A stretch of 63,194 bases of DNA, the filler included, from Octopus bimaculoides (Eukaryota), in assembly GCF_001194135.2 (NCBI RefSeq). It is 7 parts of 6 records of this genome, joined end to end, with 100 filler letters (N's around TTAATTAATTAA, not from the genome) between each part and the next. Parts side by side here need not be neighbours in the genome. Positions count along the whole stretch, not along the records: positions 22,022 to 46,928 come from NC_068993.1; 6 more parts are not named here. The stretch is one strand, 5' to 3'. Below are positions 23,107 through 43,024 of this stretch, piece by piece; within the stretch, counting starts at the first letter, position 1; each line of letters begins with the position of its first letter. A model generated the notes under the pieces. That model had not been told where the DNA came from and did no database searches. It saw nothing but the letters and a program-made list of their open reading frames with translations. The translations under genes and the position numbers were made by a program.

Positions 23107-24210
23107 TATTGGGTCAGAGGGGAATGGGATATCTACCTGCATCAACTTGCTATAAAAGCAGGTAGTATATAGAACTCTTAGTGCAAGTTTTGAAACGTGC
23201 AGTTTGATCTTAAGTTATTTTTTCAAAGCTACAACGGAATTGACAAAGGAGCATATTCGACATATTTTGCTTTATGAGTTCAATAAAGGCAAAAATGCAA
23301 TGGAAAGTGTGAGAAATGTTAATGTCGTACATGGTGATTGGATAATAAGCATAAGCTAGGCTCAATGGTGGTTCCAAAAATTCCAAGCTGGAAACTACAG
23401 CCTAGAAGACAAGCCTCATCCTGAAAGATCTGTAGAGCTGTTGAAGAACTAGCAGAGAAGCTTGGATTTGGTTATTCAACCATTCATAGACACCTACATA
23501 CCATCAGAAAAGTCAGAAAACTGGGTCAATGGATTCCTGACAAACTTTCCGAGTCTAATCACATGCAAAGAGTTAATGTGTGCTTTTCTTTGCTGTCATG
23601 TCTCATGAATGAAGCTTTTGGAGTGACTTGTGACGAGAAATGGGTTCTCTATAAAAACGTCAAGCACCAAAGACAGTGGGTAGGGAAAGGAGAAACACCG
23701 GCACCCCAGGCAAAAGAAAGTTTTCACTCAAGTAAGGTGTTATCTATTTGGTGGGATATGAAAGGTTTAGTCCACTTTGATCTTTTAAATTCAAACCAAA
23801 TGATAACAAAGGAGATCTACTGTGAGCAGCTAAAGTCAGTGCGAGAAGAAAAACAACCATTTTTGGTTTCAAGATGAAAGGTGTTCTTCCACCAGAATTA
23901 TGCTTAGCCACATACAGCAAGGATGATATTCCAAAGGCTGGAGCAGTCTGAATGGGAAATGATGCCCCACCTACCATATTCGCCAGACATTGTCCCATCT
24001 GATTATCATTTATTCCATAGTCTTCAAAATCATTTGGATAGAAAAAATATGAATTCTGTTGATATTTTGTCATGGACAAGCGAATTTTGGAAAAGGGGCC
24101 TTGCAAGTCTACCAGAGAGCATTGTAGAAAATGAAGAAGAGTATATTTTAGATTTAAAAAGAACTTTAAGAAGTATAAAAAATCCGCATTATTTATGGGA
24201 TGACCCAATA
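23107..24210 (+). mobile_element. Near full-length decayed mariner (D,D34D type)
   Basis: ELTKEHIRHILLYEFNKG, WIPDKL, VTCDEKWVLYKN, YSPDIVPSDYHLFHSLQN. Right TIR ccgcattatttatgggatgacccaata+TA; left TIR remnant TA+tattgggtca. Stops and frameshifts present. Confidence 0.9.
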
Positions 24211-24849
24211 TATATACTAGCTCAAAAGTCGCCCTATTAGGTGGCTTTTCAGCAAGAATATAGCTTTTAATCTACTAACCTCGAATGGGAAGGTCTGCTA
24301 ACAGATCTCTGGCTTGTTTTCAAGAATTTTTTACAATTGTTTCCTCCAGAATCATCTCACACTGATGATGATATTTGTAGCAAAACATCGCCAAAAATTA
24401 TTGCTGGATTTCACAATTAATTTTGATTATCCCCAAAATTTATTTCCAAGTGATAAAAATTGTTATTGTACAAAAAAATTTTGTTGCAAAAAGTCATGTA
24501 AAAAATCGTCAAAAGCAATTAATTACAGTAATGAAAACTGAATCTAAAATATCAGGATGGCGAGTCCAGATTTGGCCCGGAATGTTTTTAATTTACTCAT
24601 GGAGTTGGCTTGGTTCCAAAATTGTATGATATGTTGGGCTATGGCCTCTATGAGTGAAGTTGAAAAAGTGTGACACACTGACAATTCTCTCTCTCTTTCT
24701 CTCCCTCTCTCTCTCTGTCACCCTCTCTCTCTCTTTCTCACGCATATACACACACACACACTCACTCCCACTCATAAACATGTTAATATGAAGTATATCA
24801 CATGCAATGTGATAGTTCTGTAATTAAAATGTTTAACCCTTATTTTCAG

Positions 24850-24999
24850 AATGTCCTAAGACAGTGACCATTTGCAACCAAAATGTAGTTTGTCCAAATA
24901 ATACAGTGTACAACAAGTGTCAAATACCTTTTCTGAAAAATGCCACACTTACATGCAATGACACTCTACAATGGGATCCTTCTTTTCAGTGTCCAAAAG
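24850..24999 (+). CDS. Membrane-protein gene exon A: Cys-rich ectodomain module 1
   Basis: ccctattttcag / gtaaat; 150 nt, phase 1-1, open: (E)CPKTVTICNQNVVCPNNTVYNKCQIPFLKNATLTCNDTLQWDPSFQCPK; sequons NNT, NAT, NDT. Confidence 0.85.
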
Positions 25000-25519
25000 G
25001 TAAATTAGAACATGTTGTTATATTTTTAAGTGTTTATTAAGAAATTACTGTAAAATTAGTGGTTGACAAGCTGAGAAATGTTTATTAGTTCATGTCCCCC
25101 GTCAGTGACACTGCACTTGCATGTGTAACTCTCAAATAGTTAAGCCCACCTTGCTGTAAGTAGGTACCACAGTATAGGATCAACTCATCACTGTAAGGCC
25201 TCAGACCATAAAACAACACAAGTGCTTCTTTAGCTTAATGAGCTGGGTTCAGTTCCTCATGAATTTATCAAGGAAATTGGAATAGAGTGCCCAGTAGAAC
25301 TGTTACAAAAGGTCTGCCTCCTTGGTATGGCTGGAATAATCAGGAAAGTATTAGACAACTGAAAACAATGGATAGCATGATAGTGTAGGCTGCAGGTAGC
25401 AAGCCTGCTACACATGCAAGGCTCCAGGAATTCCAACAAAAAGAAATAATAACAACAATAATAGAAATGGTTTCAAATTCTGGTACAAGAGCAGCAATTT
25501 CAGGGAGGGAATAACTGGT

Positions 25520-26020
25520 ACATATTTTATCAAAAGGATGACAGGCAAAGTTGACCCCAGCAGAATTTGAACTCAGAAAGGAAAAACACAAAATGCTACT
25601 GAGCATTTCACCTGACATCCTAACATTTCTGATTTCAAATTTTGGCACAAAGCCAGCAACTTTAGGCAGGGAGCGGATAAGTTGATTATATCAACCCCTG
25701 TATTCAACTGGTACTTATTTTATCAACTCCAAAAGGATGAAAAGCTAAGTCAGTCATGGTGGAATCTGAACCCAGAATGTGAAAATGGATGAAATACCAC
25801 TAAGCATTTTGCCTGGCATAATAATAATAATAATAATGATGATAATAATAATAATAATAATAATGATGATAATAATCCTTTCTGTTATAGGTACAAAGCC
25901 TGAAATTTTGGGTGGGAGGGGACTAGTCAATTACATCAACCCCAGTATTTCACTGGTACTTAATTTATCGACCCCAAAAATGATGAAAAGCAAAGTCGAC
26001 CTCAGTGGAATTTGAACTCA
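25520..26020 (-). mobile_element. Cluster of three SINE family B fragments
   Basis: caaaaggatga..ggcaaagttgacc / actggtactta.tttatc.acccc motifs at about 25530, 25700 and 25950. Confidence 0.8.
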
Positions 26021-27574
26021 CAAAGCATTTCAATCAGTATGCTAACAATCTTGCCAGGTTGCAAATGATTTTCATGGCTTTTCATCTTTACTGATTGGAA
26101 GTGTTATCATGTGCATCGTTTTGTCTTGGTATAAAAGATGGACTACAGCAAATATTCTGCTCAATACCACAGATTTGCTTGTCAGTTGTTTGACCAGTTG
26201 AGCATGTCCCTTGGTGGCTGATGATAGACAAACTTATAGGAAAAATACACACTGAAAATAAAACAAAATGCTTAGCAACTCAAAACAGTTTGCTACAGCA
26301 AAAGAAAAATAGCACATCAGATGCTATATCTCCAGAAATGTATAAGACACATAAAGAAAAAAAAAAGAAAGAAACATAACAGAGGTAGCCATGCATACAG
26401 CAAACAAAAAGCTAAGCTAAAGTAAAATTTCTACACAGCTACTCATACCGGGAATAAATAGTACAGTACAGGAAAACAGCAACATAGAAAAGGAAACACT
26501 GAAACACAAAACAAGCAAAATAACACACACCATGACAGGCCAGCTATAATTGATGATGGGGATAAACTCACTGAAGAAATAGCAAAAATAGAAGAAAACA
26601 TCACAAAATCAATAAACAGTGTCCCCCTCCTATCAGTGTAAATGTCTCCCCAAATTACAAAAAAACACAGCAAAAACAAACAACTCTGTGAAAGGATAAA
26701 TAGATACAACAGAGCCCTACATGAAATAATGACCATGTCAAAAGATATCTTAGATATCTTTTCCTTACTTAGGAACATTACACAAATAAACCTCTGAAGT
26801 CATGCAAACTTCACAATCCCTGATAACATTGGGGAACATGATTTTTGTTCTCTCGAATTGGAGGCATGGTTTTCCTAGTAGCTTTGAGGTGATGATTTCA
26901 AAAATGAAATCAATTTTTCATGAACTCATTTTCCAACATTTCTGATATTTTCACCATTTCTAAGGATAGTTGGCTTCAAAGGCACATCCATATATGGAGC
27001 TTGACATAACTTTGAAAAACATAGTTTATCATTTGAAGTAAATACAACTACAAAGACGAAAACAAAAAGCCATGATTTTAATATTGCCAGTAAATAAAAA
27101 GCATCAAACCTGAGCAACTTTCACTATTTTCAATCTAACCAGTCTTAAATGTCATAATGATGACTGAAATGTCTTTTATATGATTAGATATTAATAAACA
27201 ATATATTTCTGTGGTCTTTAACATCATATATGTCTCATATTTGTGGAATTTGTCTGCAGATATGCCCACACTGTACTTGATTTAGTGTGACTATCATTGC
27301 AAACTAGGCAAGACGTGTTTTGTTGAACCATTAATTATTTCTTATGAAAATCTGTATTTTGAAGGTGCGCTTAATGTTTTAATTGTAAGGTCACATGGGT
27401 CAGGGTCACTTTTTGTCAAACATGGTCAAAGAACTGTAGAAAGAATTTCATGGTGTATACGTTTTTTTATGGAACTTTGCCATCACAAATCTGCATTTGC
27501 TGATTTTATAACTTTTGAAAATTCTGAAAATGCTTTACTCAGTAGCATGAATATGTTTTTTTGTATTTCAGAAA

Positions 27575-28020
27575 TATGACCAGTTGTGAAAGAATAAAAT
27601 GCAAAAACAGCCCAAGTCTTTTGCTTATATTTGTGGATGTTACACTTAACTAAGCAGCAAAACAAAATCATAGATTTTTTTTGTGAAGAAAGCTTACTTT
27701 GGCATGAAATTAGGTGGTCAAGACAAAGCCTGGATATTCCATATAGTGTATAAAACATGTGTTGAAACACTGAGACAGTGACTGTTTCAAATAATTAGGC
27801 AGAAGGCTTCCAGTTTTGTCTTGTGAGAAAATTAAGGTTGGTGTATTTAACAGGTTACAGATGATATGGGTAATGCAGGATAAGCAGTTTTTGAGAGATC
27901 ATGTCTGGCAGTGAAAAGAAGCATGGAATGCTTTTGCTAGAGCTGTGTCTGATTTCCTGGGGAAACAGGAAGTCATCAAATTATTAAGAACTTATGCAGA
28001 CTCTGTTAACCAATGTTTGA
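27575..28020 (+). mobile_element. Decayed, internally deleted DNA transposase, probably CMC/Chapaev3-like
   Basis: Fragments CKNSP..YICGCYT, GMKLGGQDKAWIFHIVYKTCVETLRQ, EAWNAFARAVSDFLG..NY*ELMQTLL..LGCNM resemble recalled FCYICG / GDQDKxWAPH / NFLGN..LGCNMS transposase motifs. Confidence 0.6.
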
Positions 28021-28416
28021 TAATTGGGCTGCAACATGTATATGATGAGATGCTAAAAAGTTCCTGGCCTTAAAGGGTATCATGAAAGGCCTGGCTACAT
28101 GCCTTCATATAGAAACTAATATTATAACAAAGAAAAGACAGAGAAAAAGAATCCAACATTTTGGTAGATTATTGTACTTATTCAGAGATTAAGGTGTAGG
28201 GAAAAAACTTGATAGAAGAAAACTGATAGAAGCTTTTAAATCAGCATGCTAATTTTAGTGTAGATCAGGGGAAAAAATAAATTGAACAGAAATTATGTTC
28301 AAAATTGTTCCCTTGTGTAATCATTCATAACACGATGATGATGATGATGATGATGATGAAGGTGATGATAATTTTAATCCTGTAAACTGATTTTGTTGTT
28401 TTGCTTAAATTTCCAG

Positions 28417-28602
28417 TTAATCAAAGTAAATTTTCTCCAAAAGAACAAGAATGCCCTCACAATGTTTCTGTCTGTGAAAAAAATATTCAACCAAACAAAA
28501 CAGCTGTTGGCACTAAGTTTGAGGAATCACTATTTGGCCATCGTATCCATTTTAAATGTCAAAATAACTTTGAATGGCAATATGATTATCAATGTCCAAA
28601 TG
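28417..28602 (+). CDS. Exon B: Cys-rich ectodomain module 2
   Basis: ttgttttgcttaaatttccag / gtaagt; 186 nt, phase 1-1: (V)NQSKFSPKEQECPHNVSVCEKNIQPNKTAVGTKFEESLFGHRIHFKCQNNFEWQYDYQCPN; aligns with exon A. Confidence 0.9.
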
Positions 28603-29177
28603 GTAAGTAAGAATAACATTTTTCTTACATATATAAGGTGATGATAATGGTGGTGGTGATGTTGAGAAAGTAGTTATATCTGTGACATAAGTAGGAATTG
28701 GAGATCTATATGATGTCCTCACTGTCTGCTCAATTCTTTTCTGTTTTCAGTTTCTCAATATATTCACTTAGATCTAGGCATTGCATCACATAAACATGTA
28801 CATATATGCATGTCTATGTGCTTGTTTGTGTTTGTATGAGCTATGCATACAACTGATAAGGTAATCTGCATAGCAGTAATTATTGTTAATAGTGGTTTTC
28901 ACTAACAGTCTCAACTACAACTAAAAACACTTAACTCTGTATGGATTACCTTACAAGTGTGTTATACCAGTGTGTATAAGCAGGAAAAAGTAGTCGTTTT
29001 TTTTTTTCTGAAATATCTTGTAAAACAACACTTGAGACTGTGATATTGGTGTCAGTTTATGTATTTTTGTTTATATTGTATATATCATGAGTATTTTTGC
29101 CTTATAAGTCTTACTATAACATTTTGATGTATGAGTCATGTTAACCCAGTTTAGACCAGTTGTTGTTTTTATTGCAG

Positions 29178-29294
29178 GTAAAGTATCAAAAGCTAAACGA
29201 AATATAATAGTAATCACCTGCTTAGGAGTATTTGTTCCATTATTATTGGTGTTGCTAGCAATAATATGTTGCTGCAAATCACATACAAAGAAAG
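29178..29294 (+). CDS. Exon C: transmembrane exon
   Basis: gttgtttttattgcag / gtttgt; 117 nt, phase 1-1: (G)KVSKAKRNIIVITCLGVFVPLLLVLLAIICCCKSHTKK. A hydrophobic span of about 22 aa is followed by a Cys cluster and basic stop-transfer residues. Confidence 0.85.
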
Positions 29295-29958
29295 GTTTGT
29301 ATAATATTAGAGCTTAAACTTTCTAATAACATTGTGTTGAGTGCGTCCCAAGTCTAAGAAACATTCTCAATTTCACTTCACATCACATTAACAATTCTTG
29401 TTTCTCTTTACCTTAAAAATACAATAATGAATGCTTTGTGTGTATTGTATGTAACTTACTATCACCGTCTCTGTGCATCGCCAACCAACACCTAAACATT
29501 CCAAATATCCGATCTCCTTCTTAATTCCCAAACCAGCCTCACTTACCATCTTTGTATCTATTAAACTGCCCACTCACTACCTAATCCTAACTACTTAACC
29601 ATATATCTAATACTAAGCCATTCTCCACTGTCTGGAACCTACAAAGGTGGGACCTCTGATTAGGCATAGGTTTCACCAGCTTTTTGTTACTGATCTCTTC
29701 ATACATAATTGTTTCAAGACAGCTAAGAGGGTGATGAAAACTATTCTCTAAGAGATTACATCAAATCTACCAAATGATATGTTTGTAATTGTACGATAGT
29801 ATCACAAGTGAAGAGCGTAGTTTATGATCTACAGAAGAGGCAGCAGCCATAGCCTTTACAACCCGTCTTCTCTAATGCACTTATCTAATTCTGTTTTATA
29901 TTGTTATATCTAATGTACTGTTTGATATTGTTTCTCTTTTCATAAATTTGTTTTTAAG

Positions 29959-30159
29959 GAAGCCCTATCTTACAATATTTTAAGGCTGTAGTAGGGAAAT
30001 GTATCTCATGCAACTGTCCACGTAAAAGAGAGGTCCCAGATGTTACAAATGGGGAGCAAAATGAATTATTTGTGTTGCTAGAGCGCAGCGTTACTCGTGG
30101 TAATGATACTTCAACTGTTGAGGAGCAAAGACAATTATCCTGTACAGATCACATTTCAA
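29959..30159 (+). CDS. Exon D: cytoplasmic cassette 1
   Basis: tttctcttttcataaatttgtttttaag / gtaagt; 201 nt, phase 1-1, open: (G)SPILQYFKAVVGKCISCNCPRKREVPDVTNGEQNELF...RSVTRGNDTSTVEEQRQLSCTDHIS. Confidence 0.8.
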
Positions 30160-30328
30160 GTAAGTATTAAGAAATTGTGAAACATTATCGTACTTCTGGT
30201 TACATAATTGTCAAAGTGGTTAGGTTGCAGAACAAACATGTTCACTGGTGATGTACTGTATATTTCCATGTATAAGACGATCTTTAGATAAGATGAGATT
30301 AAGGTTTGTAAAAAATTTAAGGAATTTG

Positions 30329-30660
30329 TCATCATCATCATCATCATCGTGTAATGTCCGCTTTCCATGCTAGCATGGACAATTTGACTGAGGTGAACCA
30401 GATGGCTGCACCAGGCTCCAATCTGATCTGGAAGAGTTTCTACGGCTGGATGCCCTTCCTAATGCCAACCACTCCGAGAGTGTAGTGGGTGCTTTTACAT
30501 GCCACCGGCACAAGAGCCAGTCAGGCGGTACTGGCAACAGCCACACTGAAATGGTGTTTTTTATGTGCCACCTGAACAGGAGCCAGTCCAGTGGCACTGG
30601 CAATGACCTCACTCAAATATTTTTTCACGTGCCACCGGCACAAGTGCCAGTATGGCGACA
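30329..30660 (-). mobile_element. RTE 3' tail (intronic)
   Basis: (cat)n tail, gatgcccttcct motif and gtgccacc units. Confidence 0.85.
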
Positions 30661-30739
30661 GACGACTGCTAAATTACAAAACCATCTGTGTACAAGCTAG
30701 CTTTTGCATCAAGTGAAATTTATAATTATTTTATACCTA

Positions 30740-31140
30740 TATCAACATGCAACCACCAGCAAAAGAAGAAAATATGAGACTAGTTTCAAATTGAAAGTTA
30801 TAGAAGTAGCCAAGAGTTTAAATAATCGTGCTGCTGCTAGAGCATTCAATGTTACCAAGGAGATGGTACGAGAATGGAGAAAGAATGAGGAAAAATTAAG
30901 ACAAATGCCCAAACAAAAATGTGCAATGAGAAGAGGAAGCACTCGTTGACCAAAGTTGGAAAATGATGTAGCAGAATGGGTACTCCAGCAAAGACAAGAT
31001 GGCTACATTGTAGCACAAAATAAAACAAGATCTTATGCCCTAAAATGGGCTAAATCATATAAAGAAAAAAGTAAGATCTTAAAGCAACAGTAGCCTGGTG
31101 CAATCATTTTATGAGCAGACAAAAACTGGTAATAAGGGAC
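30740..31140 (+). mobile_element. Pogo/Tigger-like transposase N-terminal fragment; probable terminal piece at about 32230-32330
   Basis: KRRKYETSFKLKVIEVAKSLNNRAAARAFNVTKEMVREWRK...R*PKLENDVAEWV (HTH_psq / CENP-B-type HTH pattern). Confidence 0.8.
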
Positions 31141-31254
31141 TGTGTTGAAACAGATATTATTGTATTTCAGGATGGTCATTTTTTTTTTTTTGCCAAATAA
31201 ACACACGCACTATATATTTATTCTTCACTTGTTTATTACTGTTCTTATTTTAAC

Positions 31255-31800
31255 TCATGTTCATTGTCTGGAAATCTTTCATCAAACAGCTGTGACCTCT
31301 TTAAGTACAGAGGCCTATCTTTAGCTATATATTGCTCCTGCTGCTGCCTTACAAGAACTATAGCATTGATGGTGCTTCTCCCTGGCATAAAACCAAACTG
31401 CATCTCATCTAGACTAATTCTCCTCCACATTAGTTGGGCTATGACTCTCTCTGTAACTTTCATCACCAGACCCAACAATATGAGACCTCTGTAATTATTT
31501 CTATCTAAGGCATCACCTTTACTTTTCTAGCAGTTGACTATGGTGCTGCTACACAAGTCATTGGGTATGACTCCTTCGTGAATTACCTGATTTACAATAC
31601 AGGTGACTAAACCATAACCTACACCACCAGATATTTTAAGCATCTCAGCAGTGACTCCTGAAGGGACAGGAGCTTTCCCTGTCTTCATGTCCTTAATTGC
31701 TTTACCAGGGTACTACTGATTCAGGTAGCTGGTCCTTCAATTGGGTCCACATTCATTTTCTACATTCATAATGGCATTTCCAAGCCTCTTTCTTTTCAGA
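31255..31800 (-). mobile_element. RTE RT fragment (intronic)
   Basis: VMKVTERVIAQLM..ISLDEMQFGFMPGRSTINAI matches 44860-44960. Confidence 0.85.
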
Positions 31801-31873
31801 ATCACCTAATGCATGTGCAACAGCATCCATTTCTCTCCTATAATATTTATCTTTTCCTACAATTATTTTCAAG

Positions 31874-32050
31874 ATATTAACAATGAAAATACTTGTGAAG
31901 TAGACCAGCTAAGAGAGCTCGGTGGGCCAGCCAATGAATCTAAGAGAAATAATGACAAAGATAGTGGATACAGTGAAGAAACTCATCAAGATGATGTACA
32001 ACAGGAGAACTGTGGCAATGATACATTGTCGCATACAGCTAACAATATGA
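31874..32050 (+). CDS. Exon E: cytoplasmic cassette 2
   Basis: ttttcctacaattattttcaag / gtaagt; 177 nt, phase 1-1: INNENTCEVDQLRELGGPANESKRNNDKDSGYSEETHQDDVQQENCGNDTLSHTANNM. Confidence 0.9.
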
Positions 32051-32654
32051 GTAAGTATTAAGCAATTGTGAAATATTATCATACTTCTGGTTACACAATT
32101 GTCAAGTGGTTAGGTTGCGGAACAAACATGTGTTCACAAGAGATGTAGATTTAATCTTTTGTATCTGATATATTTCTAGCAAAGCTACATATTACATAGT
32201 AATATGTGAGTCGAGCTGCACAGCAGACAAATATATTGATGAGGCACCTAACCTTGCTTTGATCCTCTAGCCTCGCTTTGATACAGTAGCCTCATTCTGA
32301 GACACTAGCCTCGTTCTGAACTACACTGTAGAAACAGCCTCAGTTCCTGCCAGGCTTTGGTCAAAGACTCATGTCTTCTCTACAGCTCCACATACAATCT
32401 CCCACATGCAACTCACATGTCTATTCACCAACGACACAAAATATATGGTTCGTAAACAAGGATATTTTATCACATACACATTCTCAAAATGACTGTTCTC
32501 ACATATGCATACACACTGTGATACAAATATTATATGTTACTTCTTTCAGTGCAAAAACAAAAATCAAAACTTTCTTTGTATGTAAACACACGTTTTTGTA
32601 TTATACTACATACTTCCACCACAAAAAGTGAACACAGAATAGACAATATATTTC

Positions 32655-32965
32655 ATCATCATCATTGTCGTCGTTTAACGTCCGCTTTCCATGCTAGCAT
32701 GGGTTAGACGATTTGACTGAAGACTGGTGAAACCAGATGGCTACACCAGGCTCCAATCTGATTTGGCAGAGTTTCTACAGCTGGTTGCCCTTCCTAACGT
32801 CATGCCCTTCCTGTCTTATGGTGATTCATACTATTTTTCCATCTAATAACATGCACTTGAATGTCCAGCAAATTAGCCTGGTGCAGCCATCTGGTTCGCC
32901 AGTCCTCAGTCAAATTGCCCAACCCATGCTAGCATGGAAGGCGGACGTTAAACGATGATGATGTA
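32655..32965. mobile_element. Two RTE 3' tails in opposite orientation (about 90-bp inverted repeat)
   Basis: About 32660-32755 (minus) and 32876-32963 (plus) are reverse complements. Confidence 0.9.
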
Positions 32966-33081
32966 TGTATGCAATATGTGTAGGTGTGTGTATGTATATA
33001 CACTTTACCTCTCATTCTAGCCTAATGCAGTTATCTAGTGTTGACTTTATTATATTGTTTTTATTTTCATGTAATTTGAAG

Positions 33082-33243
33082 AAGATGACAGCATGTGTAA
33101 TCATGATGAAAATCCACCAACAGACACCCCTCCCCTGAAGATTAGCAAGACTAAAAGAAGTCTTATGAAATCTTTATCATTAGGTGTTCTTTTGACAGCT
33201 GATTCTTCAAATACATCATTATTGAGTCTGCCTGGCAATATAA
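33082..33243 (+). CDS. Exon F: cytoplasmic cassette 3
   Basis: tttttattttcatgtaatttgaag (NAGNAG, alternative start 33085) / gtaagt; 162 nt, phase 1-1: DDSMCNHDENPPTDTPPLKISKTKRSLMKSLSLGVLLTADSSNTSLLSLPGNI. Confidence 0.85.
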
Positions 33244-33824
33244 GTAAGTATGAAGAATTTGTGAAATATTATCAAAGTTTGTCATAGTTCTCATACAGTT
33301 GTCAAATGGTTAGTTTTCAGAAATGGAATCCAAGCCATTTTCTCGCTATTTTGCCTATCATGTCCAAAACTTTAGATCTTCCACAATTCTTGTAGACATA
33401 ATGAGAGACAGATCTAGAGGAGTTGTGAAGCTGCTAGGGAAGTATCATGGTGGACTTGTGCTGTGTGCAATAGGCTAAATGCAGAGAAGCCTCAGACATG
33501 AAACAAAGTACAAGGTTTTCTTGATTGATAGTAGTAATGGTATGAGTAGAATAAGCATACTTTTGTAGAGAAGTGTGTAGATAAAGTAATCAATATCGTC
33601 AGAGTGAATGATAAGATAATTAAACTTTGATTTATTTTACATAATATGATAGCAACAGTTATCTCCACTTACTCTCCACAATCTAGATATTAGCATATGA
33701 ACTGAAGGTCCTGTTCAATGAAGCCTCATTCTTACTACTTTAGCCACAAATAGCAATGACTTCATCATTTTGGCTAATAACTTCAATAAACATGTTTGGC
33801 AACACCCTAGCAGTTTCCATAACA

Positions 33825-34310
33825 TCATCATCATCATCATCCTCATCATCCGCTTTCCATGCTAGCATGGGCTGGACGATTTGACTGGGGACTGGTGAAA
33901 CCAGATGGCAACACCAGGCTCCAATCTGATTTGGCAGAGTTTCTACAGCTGGATGCCCTTCCTAATGCCAACCACTCCGAGAGTGTAGTGGGTGCTTTTA
34001 CGTGTCACCCGCACGAAGGCCAGTCAGGCGGTACTGGCAACGGCCACACTCAAAATGGTGTATTTTATGTGCCACCCGCACAAGAGCCAGTCCAGGGGCA
34101 CTGGCAACGATCTCGCTCAAAAATCCTTACACATGTCACGGGGCACAAGTGCCAGAAAGGCGATGCTGGGCACAGGTGCCATCCCGATTTCACTTTCACT
34201 TGCCCTAATAAGTCTTCGCAAGCTGAGTTTTGTGTCCAATGAAGGAGACGACGTTGGCATGGGTGCCAGTCGTCAAATTTAGTTCAATTTCACTTGCCTC
34301 AACAACATAC
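33825..34310 (-). mobile_element. RTE 3'UTR and tail
   Basis: Same tail and unit array as other copies. Confidence 0.9.
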
Positions 34311-34715
34311 ATGGATATTAAAACTTGGGTCTAAGGGTCAAGGAGGACACAAAGCTCCTACACTTCTATAATGTTGATGAATGACAATTTGCAACACTGA
34401 CTTCAGGAAACCACCTACAAATCAAGTAAACACACAAGCCAGATAAATTTCATTCTTAGATCATGAAATTTTTCTCTGAGAAGAATGTACAACCCAACAC
34501 AGGTTAGTAATTAGTGGCTTCAGAGTAAGATCTAGATGGATTCAGAAATACAGAACTTCACTTAGGGAATGACAAAGGACTGTGACATGCAGTAATGCCA
34601 CAACTGTGATAGATTAGTTATGTTATGCCTAACATTAAGCGTGAATGATGCTTTATACCAAGTTATGTCAATAAGTGAGCAGAAAGGTAAAACCTGTTTA
34701 AAAATTTGCTAAATT

Positions 34716-35000
34716 CATCATCGTCGTTTAACGTCCGCTTTCCATGCTAGCATAGGTTGGACGATTTGACTGAGGACTGGTGAACCGGATGGCCACACCA
34801 GGCTCCAATCTGATTTGGCAGAGTTTCTACAGATGGATGCCCTTCCTAACGCCAACCACTCAGAGAGTGTAGTGGGTGCTTTTACGTGCCACCAGCATGA
34901 TAGCCAGTCAGGTGGTACTGGCAACAGCCACACTCAAAATGGTGTATTTTACGTGCCACCTGCACAGGAGCCAGACCAGCGGCACTGGCACGATATTGAT
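34716..35000 (-). mobile_element. RTE 3' tail
   Basis: Same tail motifs. Confidence 0.9.
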
Positions 35001-35111
35001 TGTTTAAAAAAAAACCCTGCTTCATTGAATGAGAGAATGCATTTCTGAAAATTCATATGAGTTATAAATTTAGCAAACAATATATTCATACTTCCCACTT
35101 TTATTTTACAG

Positions 35112-35147
35112 ATGAGCCAAGGTGTCATTTATCAATGCCAGTACAAG
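35112..35147 (+). CDS. Exon G: 36-nt microexon
   Basis: cttttattttacag / gtaaat; phase 1-1: EPRCHLSMPVQ. Confidence 0.75.
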
Positions 35148-35199
35148 GTAAATAGATCATTATTATTCACATTCTACAGTCTATAATTTCTCTAATACA

Positions 35200-35945
35200 A
35201 AGTGAGCATATTTTTGTTTGTTTGTACATTGACTGCTGAAAGCACTAAATAAAATTGATAATATTTCAGGATTTTCGTCCCATTTAGATTATTTGAAACA
35301 TTTTGCAAATAACTGCACTTATTTTTTAAAAATAGATTGGGTAGTGGGTGGGGTGGGGTGAGTTGGTGGTGTATCGACTCCTATTTCTAGCAATCCATGT
35401 ATTGTCTATTTCACCGTAATGTCTATACATCCTTATAAAAAGCATTGTCTGCTTCTTTGCTTGTACATTGTACATTGATTGCTGAAAACACTAAATATAA
35501 AAAGCAAAGTTTGTTTGTTTGTACGTTGACCACTGGAAATGCAAAATGATATTGATAATATTTCAGGCTTTTCATATCATTACAATTCATTTGATATTCC
35601 GCAGATAACTGCGCACTTATTTTCCAAAACCAGACTGGTAGGAGGGGGACAGTTGGTGATGTATTGGCACCTATTTCTAACAATCTATGTACTGACAATT
35701 TCACTGTAATGTTTATATCGCTGTCCTTATGAAAAGCAAAGTTTGTTTATTTGCACATTGACTGCTGAAAACACTAAATAAAATTAATATTTCAGGTTTA
35801 TCATGTCATTTCAATTAATTTGACCATTCTGCAGATAACTGTGCACTTATTTTATGAAAACGGAATGGATGAGGGTGGAAGCCAAGTTGATGGTGCATAG
35901 GCTTCTATTTCTAGCAATCCACGTACTGTCTATTGCACCATAATA
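35200..35945. repeat. Three tandem intronic units of about 250-270 bp
   Basis: tttgtttg..cattgactgctgaaa.cactaaata..atttcagg..gataactg..cacttattt..ttggtg.tg..ctatttcta.caatc recurs three times. Confidence 0.85.
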
Positions 35946-36557
35946 CTTTTTAGAGAGGGAAAAAATACTCCACCTATCACTCAATCTGCCTCTAACTTTC
36001 TCGAAGGTTATACATTACAGTTATTCTTTTGAAGTTACCACCAGACCTCTGCATTTTCTCTGTCTATATGTCCCTTTCTATGCCTCTGAGAGCATTCTGG
36101 GTGATAGCAGATAAGTAAGGTGTGATAGTAGGCAGGGAAAGATAATGGGAAATGGAAGTGGTTTGGGGTAGGGAAGAAAAGTATCTGGGAAAGGTGGGGG
36201 ATGTAGTATGTGGCTATTCTGCTCTCAGGTGATAGAAAAGTGATGGATGTTTGGGTATGAAATTTGAGGGGCAAAGGTTGACAGTGTGGAACCCCTTATA
36301 TACAAGCATTGCCAAAGTGGTTTTAGGATATCAGTTCTACTGTGGTAGACGAGTCTTTTTAAGAATAGCAAGGTGCCAGTTATTTCAATCCTTTTTCATC
36401 TCTTTTGTAAGGCTCAGCATTTTGAGATCAACCTTCAGCACTTCATTCTGTGTCTTTCTGGGTCTTCCTCTTCCACAAGTTCCAGGAACACAGAAGCATA
36501 ACCTGTATTTTATGCTTTATATAATTTAAACTGTATTTCTATATTTCCCCTTTTCAG

Positions 36558-36587
36558 AACATGGTAGCACAGCAGTGTCAGCTTATG
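36558..36587 (+). CDS. Exon H: 30-nt microexon
   Basis: atttccccttttcag / gtatgt; phase 1-1: HGSTAVSAY. Confidence 0.75.
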
Positions 36588-36639
36588 GTATGTATATCTT
36601 TTTCAACTAAGCTATATACAGTCTGCCAAGTGAAACTAT

Positions 36640-38290
36640 AGTCATAGCCGATGCTGGTGTCACATAACTGGTACCTGTGTCAGTGGCATGTAAAAAGCAC
36701 CCTTTGAATGTTGGGCCTCACAGAGTTAATAAGTGACCAAGACCTTTAGTGATATGCCATGCTTGAGAAGTCTCATCAAGCCAACTGAAATAATAAGTGT
36801 GACTGATGCCTGTGTCATTCAACTGGCACCCATGCTAGTGGAACATAAAAAGCACCCATTACACTTTTGGAATGGTTTGCATTAGGAAGGGCAATCAGCT
36901 GTAGAAACCATGCCAAATGAGATTGGGACCTGATGCGGCTCTCCATTTTATCAGTTTTAGTCAAACAGTCTAACCCATGCCAGCATGGAAAGCAGGCGCT
37001 AAATGATGACGATGATGAAGGTGATGAATCAGCCTGCATTTATCACGCACCATTCCAAGAGTGTAATGGGTGCTTTTACGTGTCACCTGCATAGGTGCCA
37101 TTTGCATGACACTGGTATCTACCATGACTGCAGTTTTACTTGGCTTCATGGGTCTTCTTCTCAAGCACAACATAATGCCAAATGGACTCAGTCCTTGCTT
37201 CTGTGATAGGTCTTCTCTCAAGCATAATATAATACCAAAGATCCCGAACATTGCCTCTGTGAGGCCCAGCATTCGAAAGGAGCTCAATCACTTTTCCTCT
37301 GTGAGGCTCAGCACTTGAATGGTGCTTTTTAAGTTCCACCTGCATGGGTACTGGTTATGTCACACCAGCATCAGCCATGACTGTGAATTCACTTGGTTTG
37401 ATCAGCCTTCTCAAGCATAGCATATTGCCAAAGGTCTCGGCCACTAGTCATTGATTCTGTGAGGTCCAAAGTTCAGAGATCATGCCTCACCACTTCATCC
37501 CATGTCTTACTGGGTCTACCTGTACCACAGGTTCCCTCCACAGTTAGGGATCGGCACTTCTTTACACAGTTATCCTCATCCATATGCATCACATGACCAT
37601 AGCAGTGCATTCGTCTCTCTTGCACACCACTTCTGGTGCCTCTCATGCCTAACTTTTCTCTCAAGATGCTTACATTCTGTCAAACATGCACACTGGCGTT
37701 GCACATCCAGCGAAGCATGCTGGCTTCATTTCTTTCAAGCCTATGCATGTCCTCGGCTGTCATAGCCCATGTTTCACTGCCATGCAGCATAACTGTTCAC
37801 ACACAGGCATCATACAATCTACCTTTCACTCTGAGAGAGAGGCCCTTTGTTGCCAACAGAGACAGGAGCTCTGTAAACTTTGCCCAACCTAATCTTATTC
37901 TAACAGCTATGCTCTCGGAGCATCCACCTCTGCTATAATGTGATCACCTAGGTAACTGAAGTTATTTACTACCTCTAGCTTATCCCCATGGCAGTTGATG
38001 GGGTCTATTTTCTGAACATTTTTGGTGTTTATTGTACCTGTGCATTTACCACACACAAAAGCTATTTTCTCTGTTAACCTTCCTCTGATATTGCTGCACC
38101 TTTTATGTGTCAAGAGCTTACACTGGGTTCATCTTACAGGGTTACTACCTACACCTTTTCTACACATAGAGCAGGGCTATCTACCTGAAGGGACTTGTAA
38201 TTTGTCTGCCTTCCTACTTACTACGACTTTGGTTTTTCGTAGGTTAACTCTAAGGCCCTTCAACCTTGCTTCCATACCTGGAACATCTCC
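36640..38290 (-). mobile_element. RTE LINE 3' portion (minus, about 37020-38290) abutting a plus-strand RTE tail (about 36640-37020)
   Basis: Minus: THKRCSNIRGRLTEKIAFVCGKC, REKLGMRGTRSGVQERRMHCYGHVMHMDEDNCVKKC. Plus-strand tail ends ggcgctaaatgatgacgatg. Confidence 0.9.
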
Positions 38291-38429
38291 AGTTCCAAAC
38301 ACATGAACTCACACGCACACACACACACACACACACAGATATATATAAAAATTTTCATAGAGCCTTTTATCTTCCTTTTGAGGAAGAAATAGAAGCAAAA
38401 AGGAAAAAAAAGAGAAAAATCAAAAATGA

Positions 38430-38850
38430 TTTCAGTGATGACCACACCACATTTCCAGGAGTGTCACTCATGGAAGACCTTCCAGATTGCTCATCCCCTT
38501 CCAGGGATATTCTTCCACTTTTGAAGCACCCATGCCACTGAAAACATTGCGTATGACCCCCCGGTCTCATCGTCATAGGCTTGTCAAAGTATGTTCAATG
38601 TATAGCAGACTTCCCAATTTTAATGCAAAATTTCACATTGGCTTTTTGTTCCTGTCCATGACAATATCACAGACTACAGCTGACATGTCATCACAAAAAC
38701 CCAAATTTCACAACTTGAGAAATAAAGACAGCAATGTTACTTGACACATAGCCTCAAGAAGGTCACTACTAGCTCTCATAGTGCATGCAAACATGTACTG
38801 CCATCTGTTGGCACACTATAGAACAAGTCCAGATTGGAAATAACGATGTC
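38430..38850 (-). mobile_element. Mariner 5' fragment, same family as 10427-11336
   Basis: Shares cagacttccc..tttaatgcaaaatttca..ttgg, gaaggtca.t.ctagct and tgccatctgttgg with the 10.9-11.3 kb region. Confidence 0.8.
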
Positions 38851-38934
38851 ATACACATATATACACACACATTCACATACATACACTCACTTACATATAA
38901 TGTTTTAAACTGTATTTCTATCCTCTCTTTTCAG

Positions 38935-38964
38935 CTATTGATAGTTTCATATCATTAACCTTTG
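38935..38964 (+). CDS. Exon I: 30-nt microexon (paralog of H)
   Basis: tcctctcttttcag / gtatgt; phase 1-1: IDSFISLTF; flanks duplicated from exon H. Confidence 0.75.
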
Positions 38965-39088
38965 GTATGTATATCTTTTTCAACATAACTATATACAGTC
39001 TGTGTGTTAATATTAGCATTTCCTTTAATACATGTAATCAGCCTGCATTTATCACACACCACACTTTAAATATAATTGAAAAGCTAAA

Positions 39089-39173
39089 TTCTTTGAAAAG
39101 CTGAATTTCTAACATGGGATTATTTCCAAGTCAGCTGATTCCTTTCATTAATGCTTTGTCAAGATGTCTCTCT

Positions 39174-39219
<46 letters not shown>

Positions 39220-39223
39220 CAGA

Positions 39224-39257
<34 letters not shown>

Positions 39258-39791
39258 CACACACTCATTCACTCACACACACACACTAACTCGCTCACAA
39301 AATATGCATGTTTAATTTGCTTCATTGTTTGTATAAATCTCATGTTGTTATTCTCTCTCTCTCTCTCTCTTCAGATTCCAGTTTAAATATTGAGTATCCA
39401 GAAGGTAATTTCCAATTAACCACTTCTCTTTTTACACATTTCTCCTTTCACCCTGATAACAGTTTGTGATTTCCAACTTTTGCCGCCTTCCCTCCATCGC
39501 AACACTCGTTCTTCTTAACCGGGGACAGTTATAAAAGGGACACTACTCTTGCAGAAATTTGCTTAGTCAAACCTGGCGATGTTTCATCATATTTGATTCA
39601 CAAGATTCGTCTTTGAGTTTGTATGTCACATATTCACAGATATTCGCTTCTGTGTATGTCTGACTGAGAGTTTATGCCCTTGTATTTAAGGATGCATATG
39701 TATAATGATAGTGACGTCTTTGAAAAGCTGAATTTCTAACATGGGATTATTTTCAAGTCAGCTGACTCCTTTCATTAATGCTTTGTCAAGA

Positions 39792-39810
<19 letters not shown>
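39089..39810. repeat. About 90-bp direct repeat plus (CT)n at about 39089 and 39719
   Basis: tttgaaaagctgaatttctaacatgggattattt.caagtcagctga.tcctttcattaatgctttgtcaagat occurs twice. Confidence 0.9.
39375..39404 (+). CDS. Exon J: 30-nt microexon
   Basis: (CT)n-tcag / gtaatt; phase 1-1: SSLNIEYPE. Confidence 0.7.
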
Positions 39811-39824
<14 letters not shown>

Positions 39825-39869
39825 ATCTCTCTCTATTTCTATCTCTATTTCACTCACACACATGCCAGC

Positions 39870-40418: not shown

Positions 40419-40463
40419 ATACCAATCACATGAGATATGACAGTTCTGTTTTGAGTGTTTAAG
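40419..40463 (+). CDS. Exon K: last coding exon (45 nt, contains stop)
   Basis: (T)n-ctag / gtatgt; phase-1 start: TNHMRYDSSVLSV* with TAA one nt before the donor. Confidence 0.7.
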
Positions 40464-41574: not shown

Positions 41575-42330
41575 TCATCATCATCATCATCATCATTTAA
41601 TGTCCACTTTACATGCAGGCATGGGTTGGATGGTTTGACTGAGGACTGCACCAAGCTCCAATATGATCTGGCAAGGTTTCTACAGTTGGATGCGCTTTCT
41701 AACACCGACCACTCTGAGTATGTAGTGGGTGCTTTTCACATGCCACCATCACAGAGCCAGTCAAGCGTTAATAGCAAAGACCATGCTTGAATGATGTTTT
41801 TTACATGCCACCAGCATGGGACCAGTCAGGCAGCACTGTCATTGACCATGTTTGTATGGTGCTTTTTTACGTGCCACCAGCACAGGAACCAGTCTGGTGG
41901 GAGTGACATTGACCACACTCGAATGGTGCTTTTTATGTGCCAGTCAGGCGGTACTGGCATCAGCCACAACAATGATTTCACTTGACTCAACAGGTCTTCT
42001 TAAGCACAGTTTATTGCCCAATGATTGAAGGGTACACTTAAATGGGCTGGTTATACAACACTGGCATAGCCCACAGTTATGGTCTCACTTGGCTTGCCAG
42101 GTCTTCTCAAGCACAACATATCTCCAAAGGTCTCGGCTGCTTGTCATTGCCTCCGTAAGGCCCAATGTTCAAAGGTCATGCTTCACCACCTCATCCCAGG
42201 TCATCCTAGGTCTACCTCTTCCACAGGTTCCCTACACTGTTTGAGTGTGACACTTCTTCACACAGTTGTCCTCATCCATACACAACACATGCCCATACTA
42301 CTGCAATCGTCTCTCTTTCACACCACACCT
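41575..42330 (-). mobile_element. RTE ORF end plus 3'UTR
   Basis: (cat)n tail, unit array, and a minus-strand GRPRMTWDEVVKHDL-type ORF terminus near 42170-42330. Confidence 0.85.
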
Positions 42331-43024
42331 GATGCTTCTCCCCTATCTTTTATTGCCTTGTTTTTTAACATATTTTTTTGAATTATACACTTGATCTACT
42401 TACCTAATTATTTTGTATAATTATTTGTTCTTTTATTCTTTTATTTCAGAAGAAATATACATTTTCATTTATTAAACTACGTAGATAAATTAATTTACAA
42501 GACAACTCAGAATAATGCGACACGAGAAAATTGTTCTGGACTGAACAATAACCTGATTGTTTATATATTAAAAAGCACACAAAAAAACGCTGCCATCTTA
42601 ACTGATTTTTGCACTTCTATTCTAGACCCATTAATGTAAATATCTTCATCTGAATTAAAACCATCATCTGAAAGTTCTTACTTTTGCTGTCTCTTGGTTT
42701 GTATTTTGTATTTGATGTATTTAAAATATTAGATATATTACTTATATATTCGATGTGTCTAATTTATTTATCCACATAATGGTTTCTCTAATCCAGAAGA
42801 TGCTCTCATCTAAATTTGCTAGTTCGCGGTACGCCCGCCCTCCCNNNNNNNNNNNNNNNNNNNNNNNNNNNNNNNNNNNNNNNNNNNNNNNNNNNNNNNN
42901 NNNNNNNNNNNNNNNNNNNNNNNNNNNNNNNNNNNNNNNNNNNNNNNNNNNNNNNNNNNNNNNNNNNNNNNNNNNNNNNNNNNNNNNNNNNNNNNNNNNN
43001 NNNNNNNNNNNNNNNNNNNNNNNN

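What the first reader, a model, noticed from the sequence alone, without database searches (positions are those of the whole stretch)
36520..39005. Paralogous 30-nt microexons H and I: about 40% identical exon, about 90% identical flanking intron
Downstream gtatgtatatctttttcaac....ctatatacagtctg is nearly identical and upstream tttaaactgtatttcta...cttttcag is shared. The exons match at only about 12/30 nt while keeping length, phase and an open frame. This is a second independent case of exon hypervariability in the same gene, and the pair may be mutually exclusive.
Basis: seen in the sequence. Interest (0 to 1): 0.75.

Follow-up and report, generated by a model that had tools for sequence, protein, structure and literature searches.

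The report
Duplicated octopus microexons with conserved splice flanks
Two neighbouring 30-base coding exons in an octopus-only membrane-protein gene are old tandem copies in which only the intron bases next to the splice sites have stayed alike, a tidy but fairly ordinary case of selection on splicing signals rather than on the encoded peptide.

Summary
Exons H (36558-36587) and I (38935-38964) are both 30 nt and in the same phase. They are 12/30 identical, which is no better than chance. About 39 nt upstream and 38 nt downstream are nearly identical.

They are real exons of an octopod-specific single-pass membrane-protein gene, the ortholog of O. sinensis LOC115218344. They lie in a run of four microexons (36, 30, 30, 30 nt) that encodes the end of the cytoplasmic tail.

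Both exons and both flank boxes are present in O. vulgaris and O. sinensis. Paralog-specific differences are shared by orthologs, so the duplication is old and gene conversion has not homogenised the flanks.

All four annotated products in those species contain H followed by I, so mutual exclusivity is not supported.

H is not hypervariable. It is the best-conserved piece of the protein (10/10 residues, 3 synonymous changes). I changes at 9/30 nt, like the rest of the tail, which evolves without codon-position bias at about twice the intron rate.

Best reading: an ancient tandem microexon duplication whose splice-proximal intron elements are under purifying selection. An 8-mer, TACAGTCT, sits at +28/+30 after three consecutive microexons. 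Its mechanism is unresolved, and an RNA-pairing model found no support.

The parts
36525..36539 (+). U box of H: TTTAAACTGTATTTC, about -33 to -19 from the 3' splice site
   Evidence: Identical in H and I of all three species. Apart from one 2-mismatch minus-strand site in L001, the only matches at <=2 mismatches in about 200 kb of octopus DNA are these six copies.
36540..36557 (+). Pyrimidine tract and acceptor (…TTTTCAG) of H
   Evidence: The tract differs between H and I and between species. TTTTCAG is invariant.
36558..36587 (+). Microexon H, 30 nt, phase 1-1, encodes (E)HGSTAVSAY
   Evidence: Matches the C-terminal part of O. vulgaris and O. sinensis proteins 10/10. There are 3 nucleotide differences, all at third codon positions.
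36588..36625 (+). D box of H: GTATGTATATCTTTTTCAACTAAGCTATATACAGTCTG, donor plus 32 further intron bases
   Evidence: 35/38 identical to the I copy. One of the first 40 intron bases differs from O. sinensis. A transposon fragment starts at 36626.
38904..38918 (+). U box of I
38935..38964 (+). Microexon I, 30 nt, phase 1-1, encodes (A)IDSFISLTF
   Evidence: The ortholog in O. vulgaris and O. sinensis encodes ALASLESSFF with the same boundaries. 9/30 nt differ. The codon count (8 codons) gives 7 nonsynonymous and 0 synonymous.
38965..39002 (+). D box of I
   Evidence: One of the first 40 intron bases differs from O. sinensis.
35112..35147 (+). Preceding microexon E7, 36 nt, phase 1-1, encodes (N)EPRCHLSMPVQ
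   Evidence: Orthologous to DEPKCRLSIPVQ. Exon 7/36 changed; downstream 40 nt 1/40 changed.
35175..35182 (+). TACAGTCT at +28 after E7, the same 8-mer as at +30 after H (36617) and I (38994)
   Evidence: These are the only three occurrences in the 24.9-kb piece. All three are conserved in both other species.
39375..39404 (+). Following microexon E10, 30 nt, phase 1-1, encodes (D)SSLNIEYPE
   Evidence: The ortholog is 31 nt in O. sinensis (frameshift, DISLNHEFSR) and has an in-frame TAG in O. vulgaris (DIS*). Its flanks lack the U and D boxes.
42450..42475 (+). Coding part of the last exon (…EEIYIFIY*)
   Evidence: Aligned to the O. sinensis terminal exon, which encodes RKNFTF* in another frame.
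24850..33243 (+). Upstream exons of the same gene, all phase 1-1: 24850-24999, 28417-28602 (acceptor uncertain), 29178-29294 (transmembrane), 29959-30159, 31874-32050, 33082-33243
   Evidence: Splice-site and frame scan, then tblastn of the O. vulgaris protein.

Best explanation
H and I are two consecutive 30-nt coding microexons near the 3' end of an octopod-specific single-pass membrane-protein gene, and every available gene model includes both. They arose by an old tandem duplication of a small splice cassette made of acceptor region, exon and donor region.

Since then the exon bodies have diverged until no similarity is detectable. H became fixed as a short conserved peptide (EHGSTAVSAY) in an otherwise unconstrained cytoplasmic tail. 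I drifts at the rate of that tail.

What has stayed alike is the splice-proximal intron: a 15-nt box about 30 nt upstream of the acceptor, the acceptor itself, and 38 nt starting at the donor. These are held by purifying selection, most probably as cis-acting signals that let the spliceosome recognise exons too short to carry their own enhancers.

Shown here:
- the anatomy and the orthology;
- the age of the duplication relative to the species split;
- the absence of concerted evolution;
- the conservation contrasts between exons and flanks.

Inferred:
- that the boxes act in splicing, and by what factor or structure;
- that the annotated models reflect real transcripts.
For: - The flank boxes are non-random and are effectively unique to these cassettes.
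- H, I and the boxes are all present at syntenic positions in O. vulgaris (L001) and O. sinensis (L002).
- The annotated proteins read ...PVQ|EHGSTAVSAY|ALASLESSFF|DIS..., using exactly these boundaries.
- Paralog-specific states are shared by orthologs: the 2-nt tract length, the tract sequence, and T against A in the D-box variable stretch. The sequences therefore group as (H,H,H)(I,I,I).
- H has 0 changes at 20 first and second codon positions and 3/10 at third positions. The cytoplasmic exons change at about 20% at all three positions.
- The four microexon bodies differ at 26/126 positions against 20/312 in their +/-40-nt flanks (p=4e-5). The donor-side 40 nt differ at only 6/160. The intron-wide figure is 929/11115, or 8.4%.
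- The U and D boxes of H and I show 2 differences between species where about 9 are expected at the intron rate (P=0.006).
- Transposon fragments abut the H cassette on both sides (36483 and 36626) but do not enter it.
- TACAGTCT occurs only three times in the piece, each at +28/+30 after a consecutive microexon, and is conserved in three species.
Against: - There is no transcript data. That both exons are always included rests on gene models whose RNA support I could not inspect.
- The exon bodies share no significant similarity (12/30, P about 0.11). Paralogy of the exons themselves is therefore inferred from flanks, length and phase only.
- If I's peptide is unconstrained and skipping it would keep the frame, it is unclear why its splice flanks should be so strictly conserved.
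- The boxes are invariant rather than merely motif-like, which is stronger than typical degenerate splicing enhancers require.
- No known regulator motif was recognised. There is no UGC near the acceptor and no GCATG downstream (my reading of the sequences).
- Local intron divergence near H is already low (about 6-7%), so part of the ortholog conservation there is background.
Confidence: 0.62

Rival explanations
1. H and I are mutually exclusive alternative exons. Choice is directed by competing RNA pairings between the D box (ATACAGT) and the U box (ACTGTAT), in the manner of docking and selector sites.
For: - The two exons have the same length and phase, so either one alone keeps the frame.
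- ACTGTAT in the U box is the exact reverse complement of ATACAGT in the D box.
- E7 carries the D-type 8-mer downstream but no U box upstream, as a docking-like site would.
Against: - All four annotated products in two species contain H followed by I.
- The peptides are unrelated, unlike typical mutually exclusive pairs.
- Including both or neither keeps the frame, so nonsense-mediated decay cannot enforce exclusivity.
- The intron between them is 2.3 kb and both are GT-AG, so steric or spliceosome-type incompatibility is excluded.
- Duplex energies of cognate intron ends (-9.8 and -9.4 kcal/mol) are matched or beaten by 276 and 189 of 1000 shuffles, and by many non-cognate pairs.
- Cassette folds have z-scores from +0.44 to -1.09.
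- A U-like box upstream of E10 in the window is deleted in the other species.
Confidence: 0.1
2. The flanks are alike because gene conversion between the two cassettes keeps homogenising the intron while the exons escape.
For: Very high paralog identity in the boxes (0/15 and 3/38 differences) despite saturated exon bodies.
Against: - Differences that distinguish H from I are the same in all three species.
- No site shows a change shared by H and I within one lineage.
- Conversion would need two separate tracts of under 40 nt stopping at the exon boundaries and skipping 30 nt of non-homology. From general knowledge, that is far below the usual homology needed.
Confidence: 0.05
3. Diversifying (positive) selection drives the exon bodies apart while the introns evolve neutrally, as in venom-peptide genes whose exons diverge faster than their introns.
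For: - Exons diverge 17.5% against 8.4% for introns at equal GC content (p=8e-20).
- dN/dS is 1.4-2.2 in exons E4 and E5.
- In I the codon count (8 codons) gives 7 nonsynonymous and 0 synonymous changes.
- The ectodomain family is octopod-specific, with a paralog encoded by the neighbouring accession. This is typical of fast-evolving receptor-like genes.
Against: - Third codon positions in the cytoplasmic exons change as fast (18.4%) as first and second positions (19.8%, 20.8%).
- H's third positions change at 3/10. The excess over introns is therefore not specific to amino-acid-changing sites.
- Overall dN/dS is about 0.75.
- The tail end tolerates a frameshift and a premature stop between sister species, which looks like relaxed constraint.
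- This reading does not explain why the flanks are more conserved than the average intron.
Confidence: 0.15
4. The shared unit is a fragment of a dispersed repeat (transposon or MITE) that happens to carry splice-like sites, and one or both 'exons' are not real.
For: The locus is packed with SINE and LINE fragments, and the H cassette is flanked by them. The U and D boxes contain a 7-nt inverted repeat.
Against: - Apart from one 2-mismatch minus-strand match to the U box in L001, no further copy of either box exists in about 200 kb of octopus sequence from three genomes.
- The interior differs completely between the copies.
- Both are used as exons in two independent annotations.
- H shows a clear coding signature.
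- There is no Rfam match above threshold.
Confidence: 0.03

Closest known systems
Tandem exon duplication (paralogous neighbouring exons, e.g. as reviewed for human tandem duplicated exon substitution events, PMC9741552)
   Same: Two adjacent exons in one gene with identical length and phase and homologous splice-site surroundings. The pair is old and retained in orthologs.
   Different: The exon bodies and peptides retain no detectable similarity. Gene models include both exons rather than substituting one for the other. Homology survives only in about 39 + 38 nt of intron.
Conserved microexon programmes with highly conserved flanking introns (neuronal and islet microexons dependent on SRRM3/4; e.g. 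bioRxiv 10.1101/2024.09.17.613571; Irimia et al. 2014 from my own knowledge)
   Same: Very short, frame-preserving exons whose adjacent intron sequence is more conserved than ordinary intron. Recognition is presumed to depend on intronic elements.
   Different: At 30-36 nt they sit at or above the usual 3-27 nt limit. No UGC element lies next to the acceptor. Three of the four exon bodies are poorly conserved, whereas classical microexons are highly conserved. Tissue regulation is unknown.
Competing RNA secondary structures (docking and selector sites) in arthropod mutually exclusive exon clusters such as Dscam and 14-3-3 zeta (from my own knowledge)
   Same: Repeated, conserved intronic boxes next to duplicated exons, with complementarity between a box after one exon and a box before the next.
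   Different: The complementarity here is only 7 AU-rich base pairs, no stronger than chance. There is no covariation, because the boxes are invariant. The exons are co-included in the models.
Genes whose exons diverge faster than their introns (conotoxin and snake-venom PLA2 genes; from my own knowledge)
   Same: Exon divergence is about twice intron divergence across the gene.
   Different: The excess is equal at all codon positions and overall dN/dS is below 1. The product is a membrane protein, not a secreted toxin. The pattern fits relaxed constraint plus slower-evolving introns better than diversifying selection.
Schistosome micro-exon genes (MEGs; from my own knowledge)
   Same: A run of symmetric (phase 1-1) microexons of 30-36 nt encoding a fast-evolving peptide segment.
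   Different: Only four of at least a dozen exons are microexons. They encode a cytoplasmic tail of a transmembrane protein, not the bulk of a secreted protein. No alternative combinations are documented.

Membership tests
Tandemly duplicated exons | Adjacent exons in the same gene with the same length and phase | tested here: met
   Both are 30 nt and phase 1-1, 2347 nt apart, with no exon between them.
Tandemly duplicated exons | Detectable sequence homology between the two exon bodies or peptides | tested here: not met
   12/30 nt, P about 0.11 by chance. In the peptides HGSTAVSAY and IDSFISLTF only one position is identical.
Tandemly duplicated exons | Homology of the immediately flanking sequence, showing a common origin of the cassette | tested here: met
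   U box 15/15, TTTTCAG 7/7, D box 35/38. 0 matches expected by chance.
Mutually exclusive exon pair | Transcripts contain one or the other, never both | tested here: not met
   This was tested only against annotations. All four products in O. vulgaris and O. sinensis contain H followed by I. No RNA data were available.
Mutually exclusive exon pair | A mechanism enforcing exclusivity (short intron, incompatible splice sites, frame/NMD coupling, or competing RNA structures) | tested here: not met
   The intron is 2.3 kb, both exons are GT-AG, and both are multiples of 3. Box pairing is no better than shuffles.
Classical regulated microexons (SRRM3/4- or eMIC-dependent) | Length 3-27 nt and a multiple of 3 | tested here: inconclusive
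   They are 30 nt and a multiple of 3, just above the usual cut-off.
Classical regulated microexons (SRRM3/4- or eMIC-dependent) | Flanking intron more conserved than ordinary intron | tested here: met
   The donor-side 40 nt of the four microexons differ at 6/160 against 8.4% intron-wide. Both flanks together differ at 6.4%.
Classical regulated microexons (SRRM3/4- or eMIC-dependent) | UGC-containing enhancer just upstream of the acceptor | tested here: not met
   There is no TGC in the last 33 nt upstream of H or I in any of the three species (sequences).
Classical regulated microexons (SRRM3/4- or eMIC-dependent) | Neural or endocrine-specific inclusion | not testable with these tools
   No expression data.
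Concerted evolution by gene conversion | Paralogs within a species more alike than orthologs between species, with shared lineage-specific changes | tested here: not met
   Paralog-specific states are shared across the three species, and there are no concerted changes.
Positively selected 'fast exon, slow intron' genes | Exon divergence exceeds intron divergence | tested here: met
   17.5% against 8.4%, p=8e-20, at equal GC.
Positively selected 'fast exon, slow intron' genes | The excess is specific to amino-acid-changing sites (dN/dS > 1) | tested here: inconclusive
   dN/dS is 0.75 overall and 1.4-2.2 in two exons, but the three codon positions change at equal rates in the tail.

The most novel reading that the evidence does not exclude
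The invariant U box and D box mark a dedicated cis-acting code for splicing a chain of consecutive microexons across long, transposon-filled introns. The D box includes TACAGTCT, placed at +28/+30 after three successive microexons. The code would work through an unidentified sequence-specific factor or an RNA switch: the D box's distal arm can pair either with the donor-proximal TGTATAT or with the U box. It would be conserved independently of what the exons encode. Exon I would then be kept mainly as a splicing stepping-stone or length spacer rather than for its peptide.
Probability: 0.2. Interest if true: 0.55.

Novelty: new member of a known kind. Interest (0 to 1): 0.3.

Why it matters
This is a clean natural example of selection on splicing signals separated from selection on the encoded peptide. 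The same about 100-nt cassette occurs twice in one gene, once around a strictly conserved peptide and once around a freely drifting one, with the same invariant intron boxes.

That makes the boxes, and the TACAGTCT element at a fixed distance from three donors, easy to test in minigenes as microexon-recognition elements in a cephalopod, a group where splicing regulation is little studied.

Beyond that, its importance is modest.

Tried and rejected
1. Intron-bridging or docking-selector RNA pairing between D and U boxes. Duplex energies for the cognate pairs E7>H and H>I (-9.8 and -9.4 kcal/mol) were reached by 276 and 189 of 1000 shuffles and exceeded by many non-cognate pairs. Cassette folds were not more stable than shuffles. 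The U-like box before E10 is not conserved. I kept this only as a low-probability idea.
2. A known non-coding RNA in the flanks. Only two Rfam matches appeared, both far below gathering score and lying largely on microsatellite-like sequence upstream of I. No tRNA was found.
3. A dispersed-repeat origin. Neither box has a further copy in about 200 kb, apart from one 2-mismatch minus-strand site in L001. Extra AACTGTAT/ATACAGT hits in L001 and L002 belong to an unrelated palindromic MITE-like insertion.
4. Residual homology of the introns beyond the boxes, to size the original duplication. None was found apart from transposons and microsatellites.
5. The candidate 45-nt exon 40419-40463 as the terminal coding exon. 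I rejected it: the annotated O. sinensis terminal exon aligns to window 42450 onwards.
6. The first automatic collinear chain for intron divergence was corrupted by transposon hits. I redid it with hand-checked blocks.
7. A base-composition explanation for fast exons. I rejected it because GC is 0.36 in exons and 0.37 in introns.
8. Function of the protein. There is no Pfam family above threshold and no PDB relative. Remote homologs share only the ectodomain.
9. The look-up of P0001's locus failed because only the longest product is indexed. It was solved with P0002 and P0003.
Full report
**What is in the sequence**

The piece is AT-rich, transposon-laden animal DNA. At the reported place there are two cassettes with the same layout:
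- TTTAAACTGTATTTC
- a pyrimidine tract
- TTTTCAG
- a 30-nt exon
- GTATGTATATCTTTTTCAAC, about 5 variable bases, then TATATACAGTCTG

Exon H is 36558-36587 and exon I is 38935-38964.

The exon bodies agree at 12 of 30 positions, which is not more than composition alone gives (P about 0.11). The 21-mer spanning the donor occurs exactly twice in the window, with none expected in 100 shuffles.

Only one reading frame is open in both exons. Both start with two bases that complete a codon and end with one spare base, so both are phase 1-1.

The similarity is confined to about 39 nt upstream and 38 nt downstream. A sensitive comparison of the neighbouring introns finds nothing else in common except transposons and microsatellites. 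The H cassette is hemmed in by transposon fragments ending at 36483 and beginning at 36626.

**The gene**

A scan for splice-site-bounded open segments found a series of plus-strand exons, all in phase 1-1:

| Exon | Coordinates | Note |
|---|---|---|
| E1 | 24850-24999 | |
| E2 | 28417-28602 | acceptor uncertain |
| TM | 29178-29294 | transmembrane segment |
| E4 | 29959-30159 | |
| E5 | 31874-32050 | |
| E6 | 33082-33243 | |
| E7 | 35112-35147 | microexon, 36 nt |
| H | 36558-36587 | microexon, 30 nt |
| I | 38935-38964 | microexon, 30 nt |
| E10 | 39375-39404 | microexon, 30 nt |

The joined translation hit a single protein cluster among 5.8 billion proteins (E=6e-115). That cluster holds three hypothetical proteins of Octopus vulgaris and 'uncharacterized protein LOC115218344' of O. 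sinensis.

The protein has cysteine-rich ectodomain repeats, one membrane span and a long cytoplasmic tail. It has no Pfam family above threshold and no relative in the PDB. An exhaustive HMMER search found eight further proteins. The six I read share only the ectodomain, and the five of those that carry a source name come from Octopus or Argonauta. One, from its adjacent accession number, is probably the neighbouring O. vulgaris gene. No paper mentions the locus.

**Are H and I real exons, and are they alternative?**

The orthologous proteins end ...PVQ EHGSTAVSAY ALASLESSFF DIS(LNHEFSRRKNFTF). This is E7, H, I and E10 in a row, with exactly the boundaries seen in the window. All four annotated products in two species carry both H and I.

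I could not inspect the RNA evidence behind the models. Since 30-nt exons are rarely predicted without transcript support, this is reasonable though indirect evidence that both are spliced in together.

Nothing in the anatomy would enforce mutual exclusion. The intron between them is 2.3 kb, both have GT-AG sites, and both are multiples of three, so any combination keeps the frame.

**Comparison with the orthologous loci**

I fetched the O. vulgaris (L001) and O. sinensis (L002) loci. The whole piece is collinear with them. H, I and both boxes are present in each, so the duplication predates the split of the three species.

In the six-sequence alignment, the features that distinguish H from I are the same in all three species:
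- the 2-nt length difference and the sequence of the pyrimidine tract;
- T against A in the variable stretch of the D box.

No change is shared by H and I within a lineage. The sequences group by paralog, not by species. That excludes gene conversion since the split and makes it an unlikely cause overall.

**H is conserved, I drifts**

Between the window and O. sinensis, H differs at three bases, all at third codon positions and all synonymous. Its ten residues are identical although the protein as a whole is only 56-58% identical.

I differs at 9 of 30 bases. Over the 8 codons counted, 7 changes are nonsynonymous and none synonymous. E7 differs at 7/36 and E10 at 7/30. E10 is 31 nt in O. sinensis, which shifts the frame, and carries an in-frame TAG in O. 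vulgaris. The three species therefore end the protein differently.

H is thus not hypervariable. It is an island of constraint in a tail that is otherwise free to change.

**Exons against introns, gene-wide**

| Comparison (window against O. sinensis) | Differences | Rate |
|---|---|---|
| Aligned intron, hand-checked collinear blocks | 929/11115 | 8.4% |
| All exons | 193/1106 | 17.5% |
| Four microexon bodies | 26/126 | 20.6% |
| Their +/-40-nt flanks | 20/312 | 6.4% |
| Their donor-side 40 nt only | 6/160 | 3.75% |

- The exon-against-intron contrast has p=8e-20, at equal GC content of 0.36 and 0.37.
- In the cytoplasmic exons the three codon positions change equally (19.8%, 20.8%, 18.4%). 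H's third positions change at 3/10.
- Overall dN/dS is about 0.75, with values above 1 in two exons.
- I read this as little or no protein-level constraint on the tail, combined with a synonymous and exonic rate about twice the intron rate. Clear positive selection is not shown.
- I's 30% is within what the tail's roughly 20% predicts for 30 sites.
- The microexon body-against-flank contrast has p=4e-5.
- The U and D boxes of H and I show 2 differences where about 9 are expected at the intron rate (P=0.006).

The boxes are therefore under purifying selection of their own.

**What the boxes might do**

The 8-mer TACAGTCT occurs only three times in the 24.9-kb piece: at +28 after E7 and at +30 after H and after I. 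All three are conserved in the other two species. This points to a position-specific intronic element shared by three consecutive microexons, and it suggests E7 is an older relative of the cassette.

ACTGTAT in the U box is the reverse complement of ATACAGT in the D box. TGTATAT just after the donor can also pair with ATATACA. The positions that vary between D-box copies fall between these arms. I tested pairing models and found no support:
- Cassette folds are not more stable than shuffles (z from +0.44 to -1.09).
- Duplexes between cognate intron ends are matched by 19-28% of shuffles and by many non-cognate pairs.
- A U-like box before E10 in the window is absent in the other species.
- No covariation can be assessed, because the boxes are invariant.
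- No Rfam family matches.
- The familiar microexon enhancer (UGC next to the acceptor) is absent.

The mechanism therefore remains an inference. The most likely role is sequence-specific intronic splicing signals needed to define very short exons.

**Verdict**

The 'paralogous microexons' reading is supported through flanks, length and phase. 'Hypervariable' applies to I and the rest of the tail, but not to H. 'Mutually exclusive' is not supported, and neither is gene conversion.

This is a new example of known kinds of things: tandem exon duplication, and microexons with conserved flanking introns. It comes with a neat internal control and a candidate fixed-distance intronic element, and is of modest general interest.

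Noticed in passing
window 24850-39404 against L002: Across the whole gene, exons diverge about twice as fast as aligned introns (17.5% against 8.4%) at equal GC. In the cytoplasmic exons all three codon positions change at about 20%. Synonymous and exonic sites therefore evolve faster than introns here, which remains unexplained. Introns may be broadly constrained, or the exons may have a higher mutation rate.
   Followed up: partly
window exons against L002: On the coding strand, A/G differences outnumber C/T differences in exons (64 against 38) but not in introns (299 against 284). This could relate to cephalopod A-to-I editing or to amino-acid effects. I did not pursue it.
   Followed up: no
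window 39375-39404; L002 about 59205-59235; L001 about 92280-92310: Microexon E10 is 30 nt in the window and 31 nt in O. sinensis (frameshift), and carries an in-frame TAG in O. vulgaris. The three species therefore have three different C-termini (EEIYIFIY*, RKNFTF*, DIS*).
   Followed up: yes
window 35213-35944: Three tandem copies of a 230-290-nt unit (67-85% alike) lie in the E7-to-H intron, each containing a TTTCAG. The region aligns poorly with O. sinensis. It is probably a satellite-like repeat, not exons.
   Followed up: no
window 39090-39235 and 39717-39862: A 146-nt direct repeat (88%) brackets microexon E10 at a spacing of 627 nt. Both copies have counterparts in O. vulgaris and O. 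sinensis. It may be the remnant of a further tandem duplication whose second unit lost the exon.
   Followed up: partly
window 36626-36815 against 37297-37478 (minus orientation): Inverted copies of a repeat element (about 75% alike) lie within the H-to-I intron, the first starting exactly where the D box of H ends. The first copy aligns to the orthologous position in O. vulgaris.
   Followed up: partly
window 40419-40463: A 45-nt segment with a strong acceptor (T-run plus TAG) and a GTATGT donor is open in the gene's phase until a TAA near its end. The orthologous O. sinensis sequence is about 78-80% alike but is not in the annotated model. It could be an unannotated alternative terminal or poison exon, or nothing.
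   Followed up: partly
L002 58440-58700 (and L001 about 91540-91800): A perfect-armed palindromic, MITE-like insertion sits in the I-to-E10 intron of O. sinensis and O. vulgaris. The BLAST blocks of window 38359-39079 and 39090-39707 skip it, so it is probably absent from the window at the orthologous place.
   Followed up: partly
L001 32036-32182 and 32336-32485: In O. vulgaris an N-terminal exon (KYKTKLGHIEYCCRC...) has an unannotated tandem copy 300 nt upstream with 71% amino-acid identity. This is another exon duplication in the same gene, outside the window's piece.
   Followed up: no
window 23563-24240; 43158-45250; 42845-43024: There are mariner-like transposase ORF fragments (23563-24240) and ORFs of a LINE-type retrotransposon whose product reads like endonuclease and reverse transcriptase (43158-45250; my reading, no domain search). 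Multiple SINE copies occur (for example 30329-30650, 33821-34180, 34706-35000, 41575-41970), and there is a 180-nt run of N (assembly gap).
   Followed up: no
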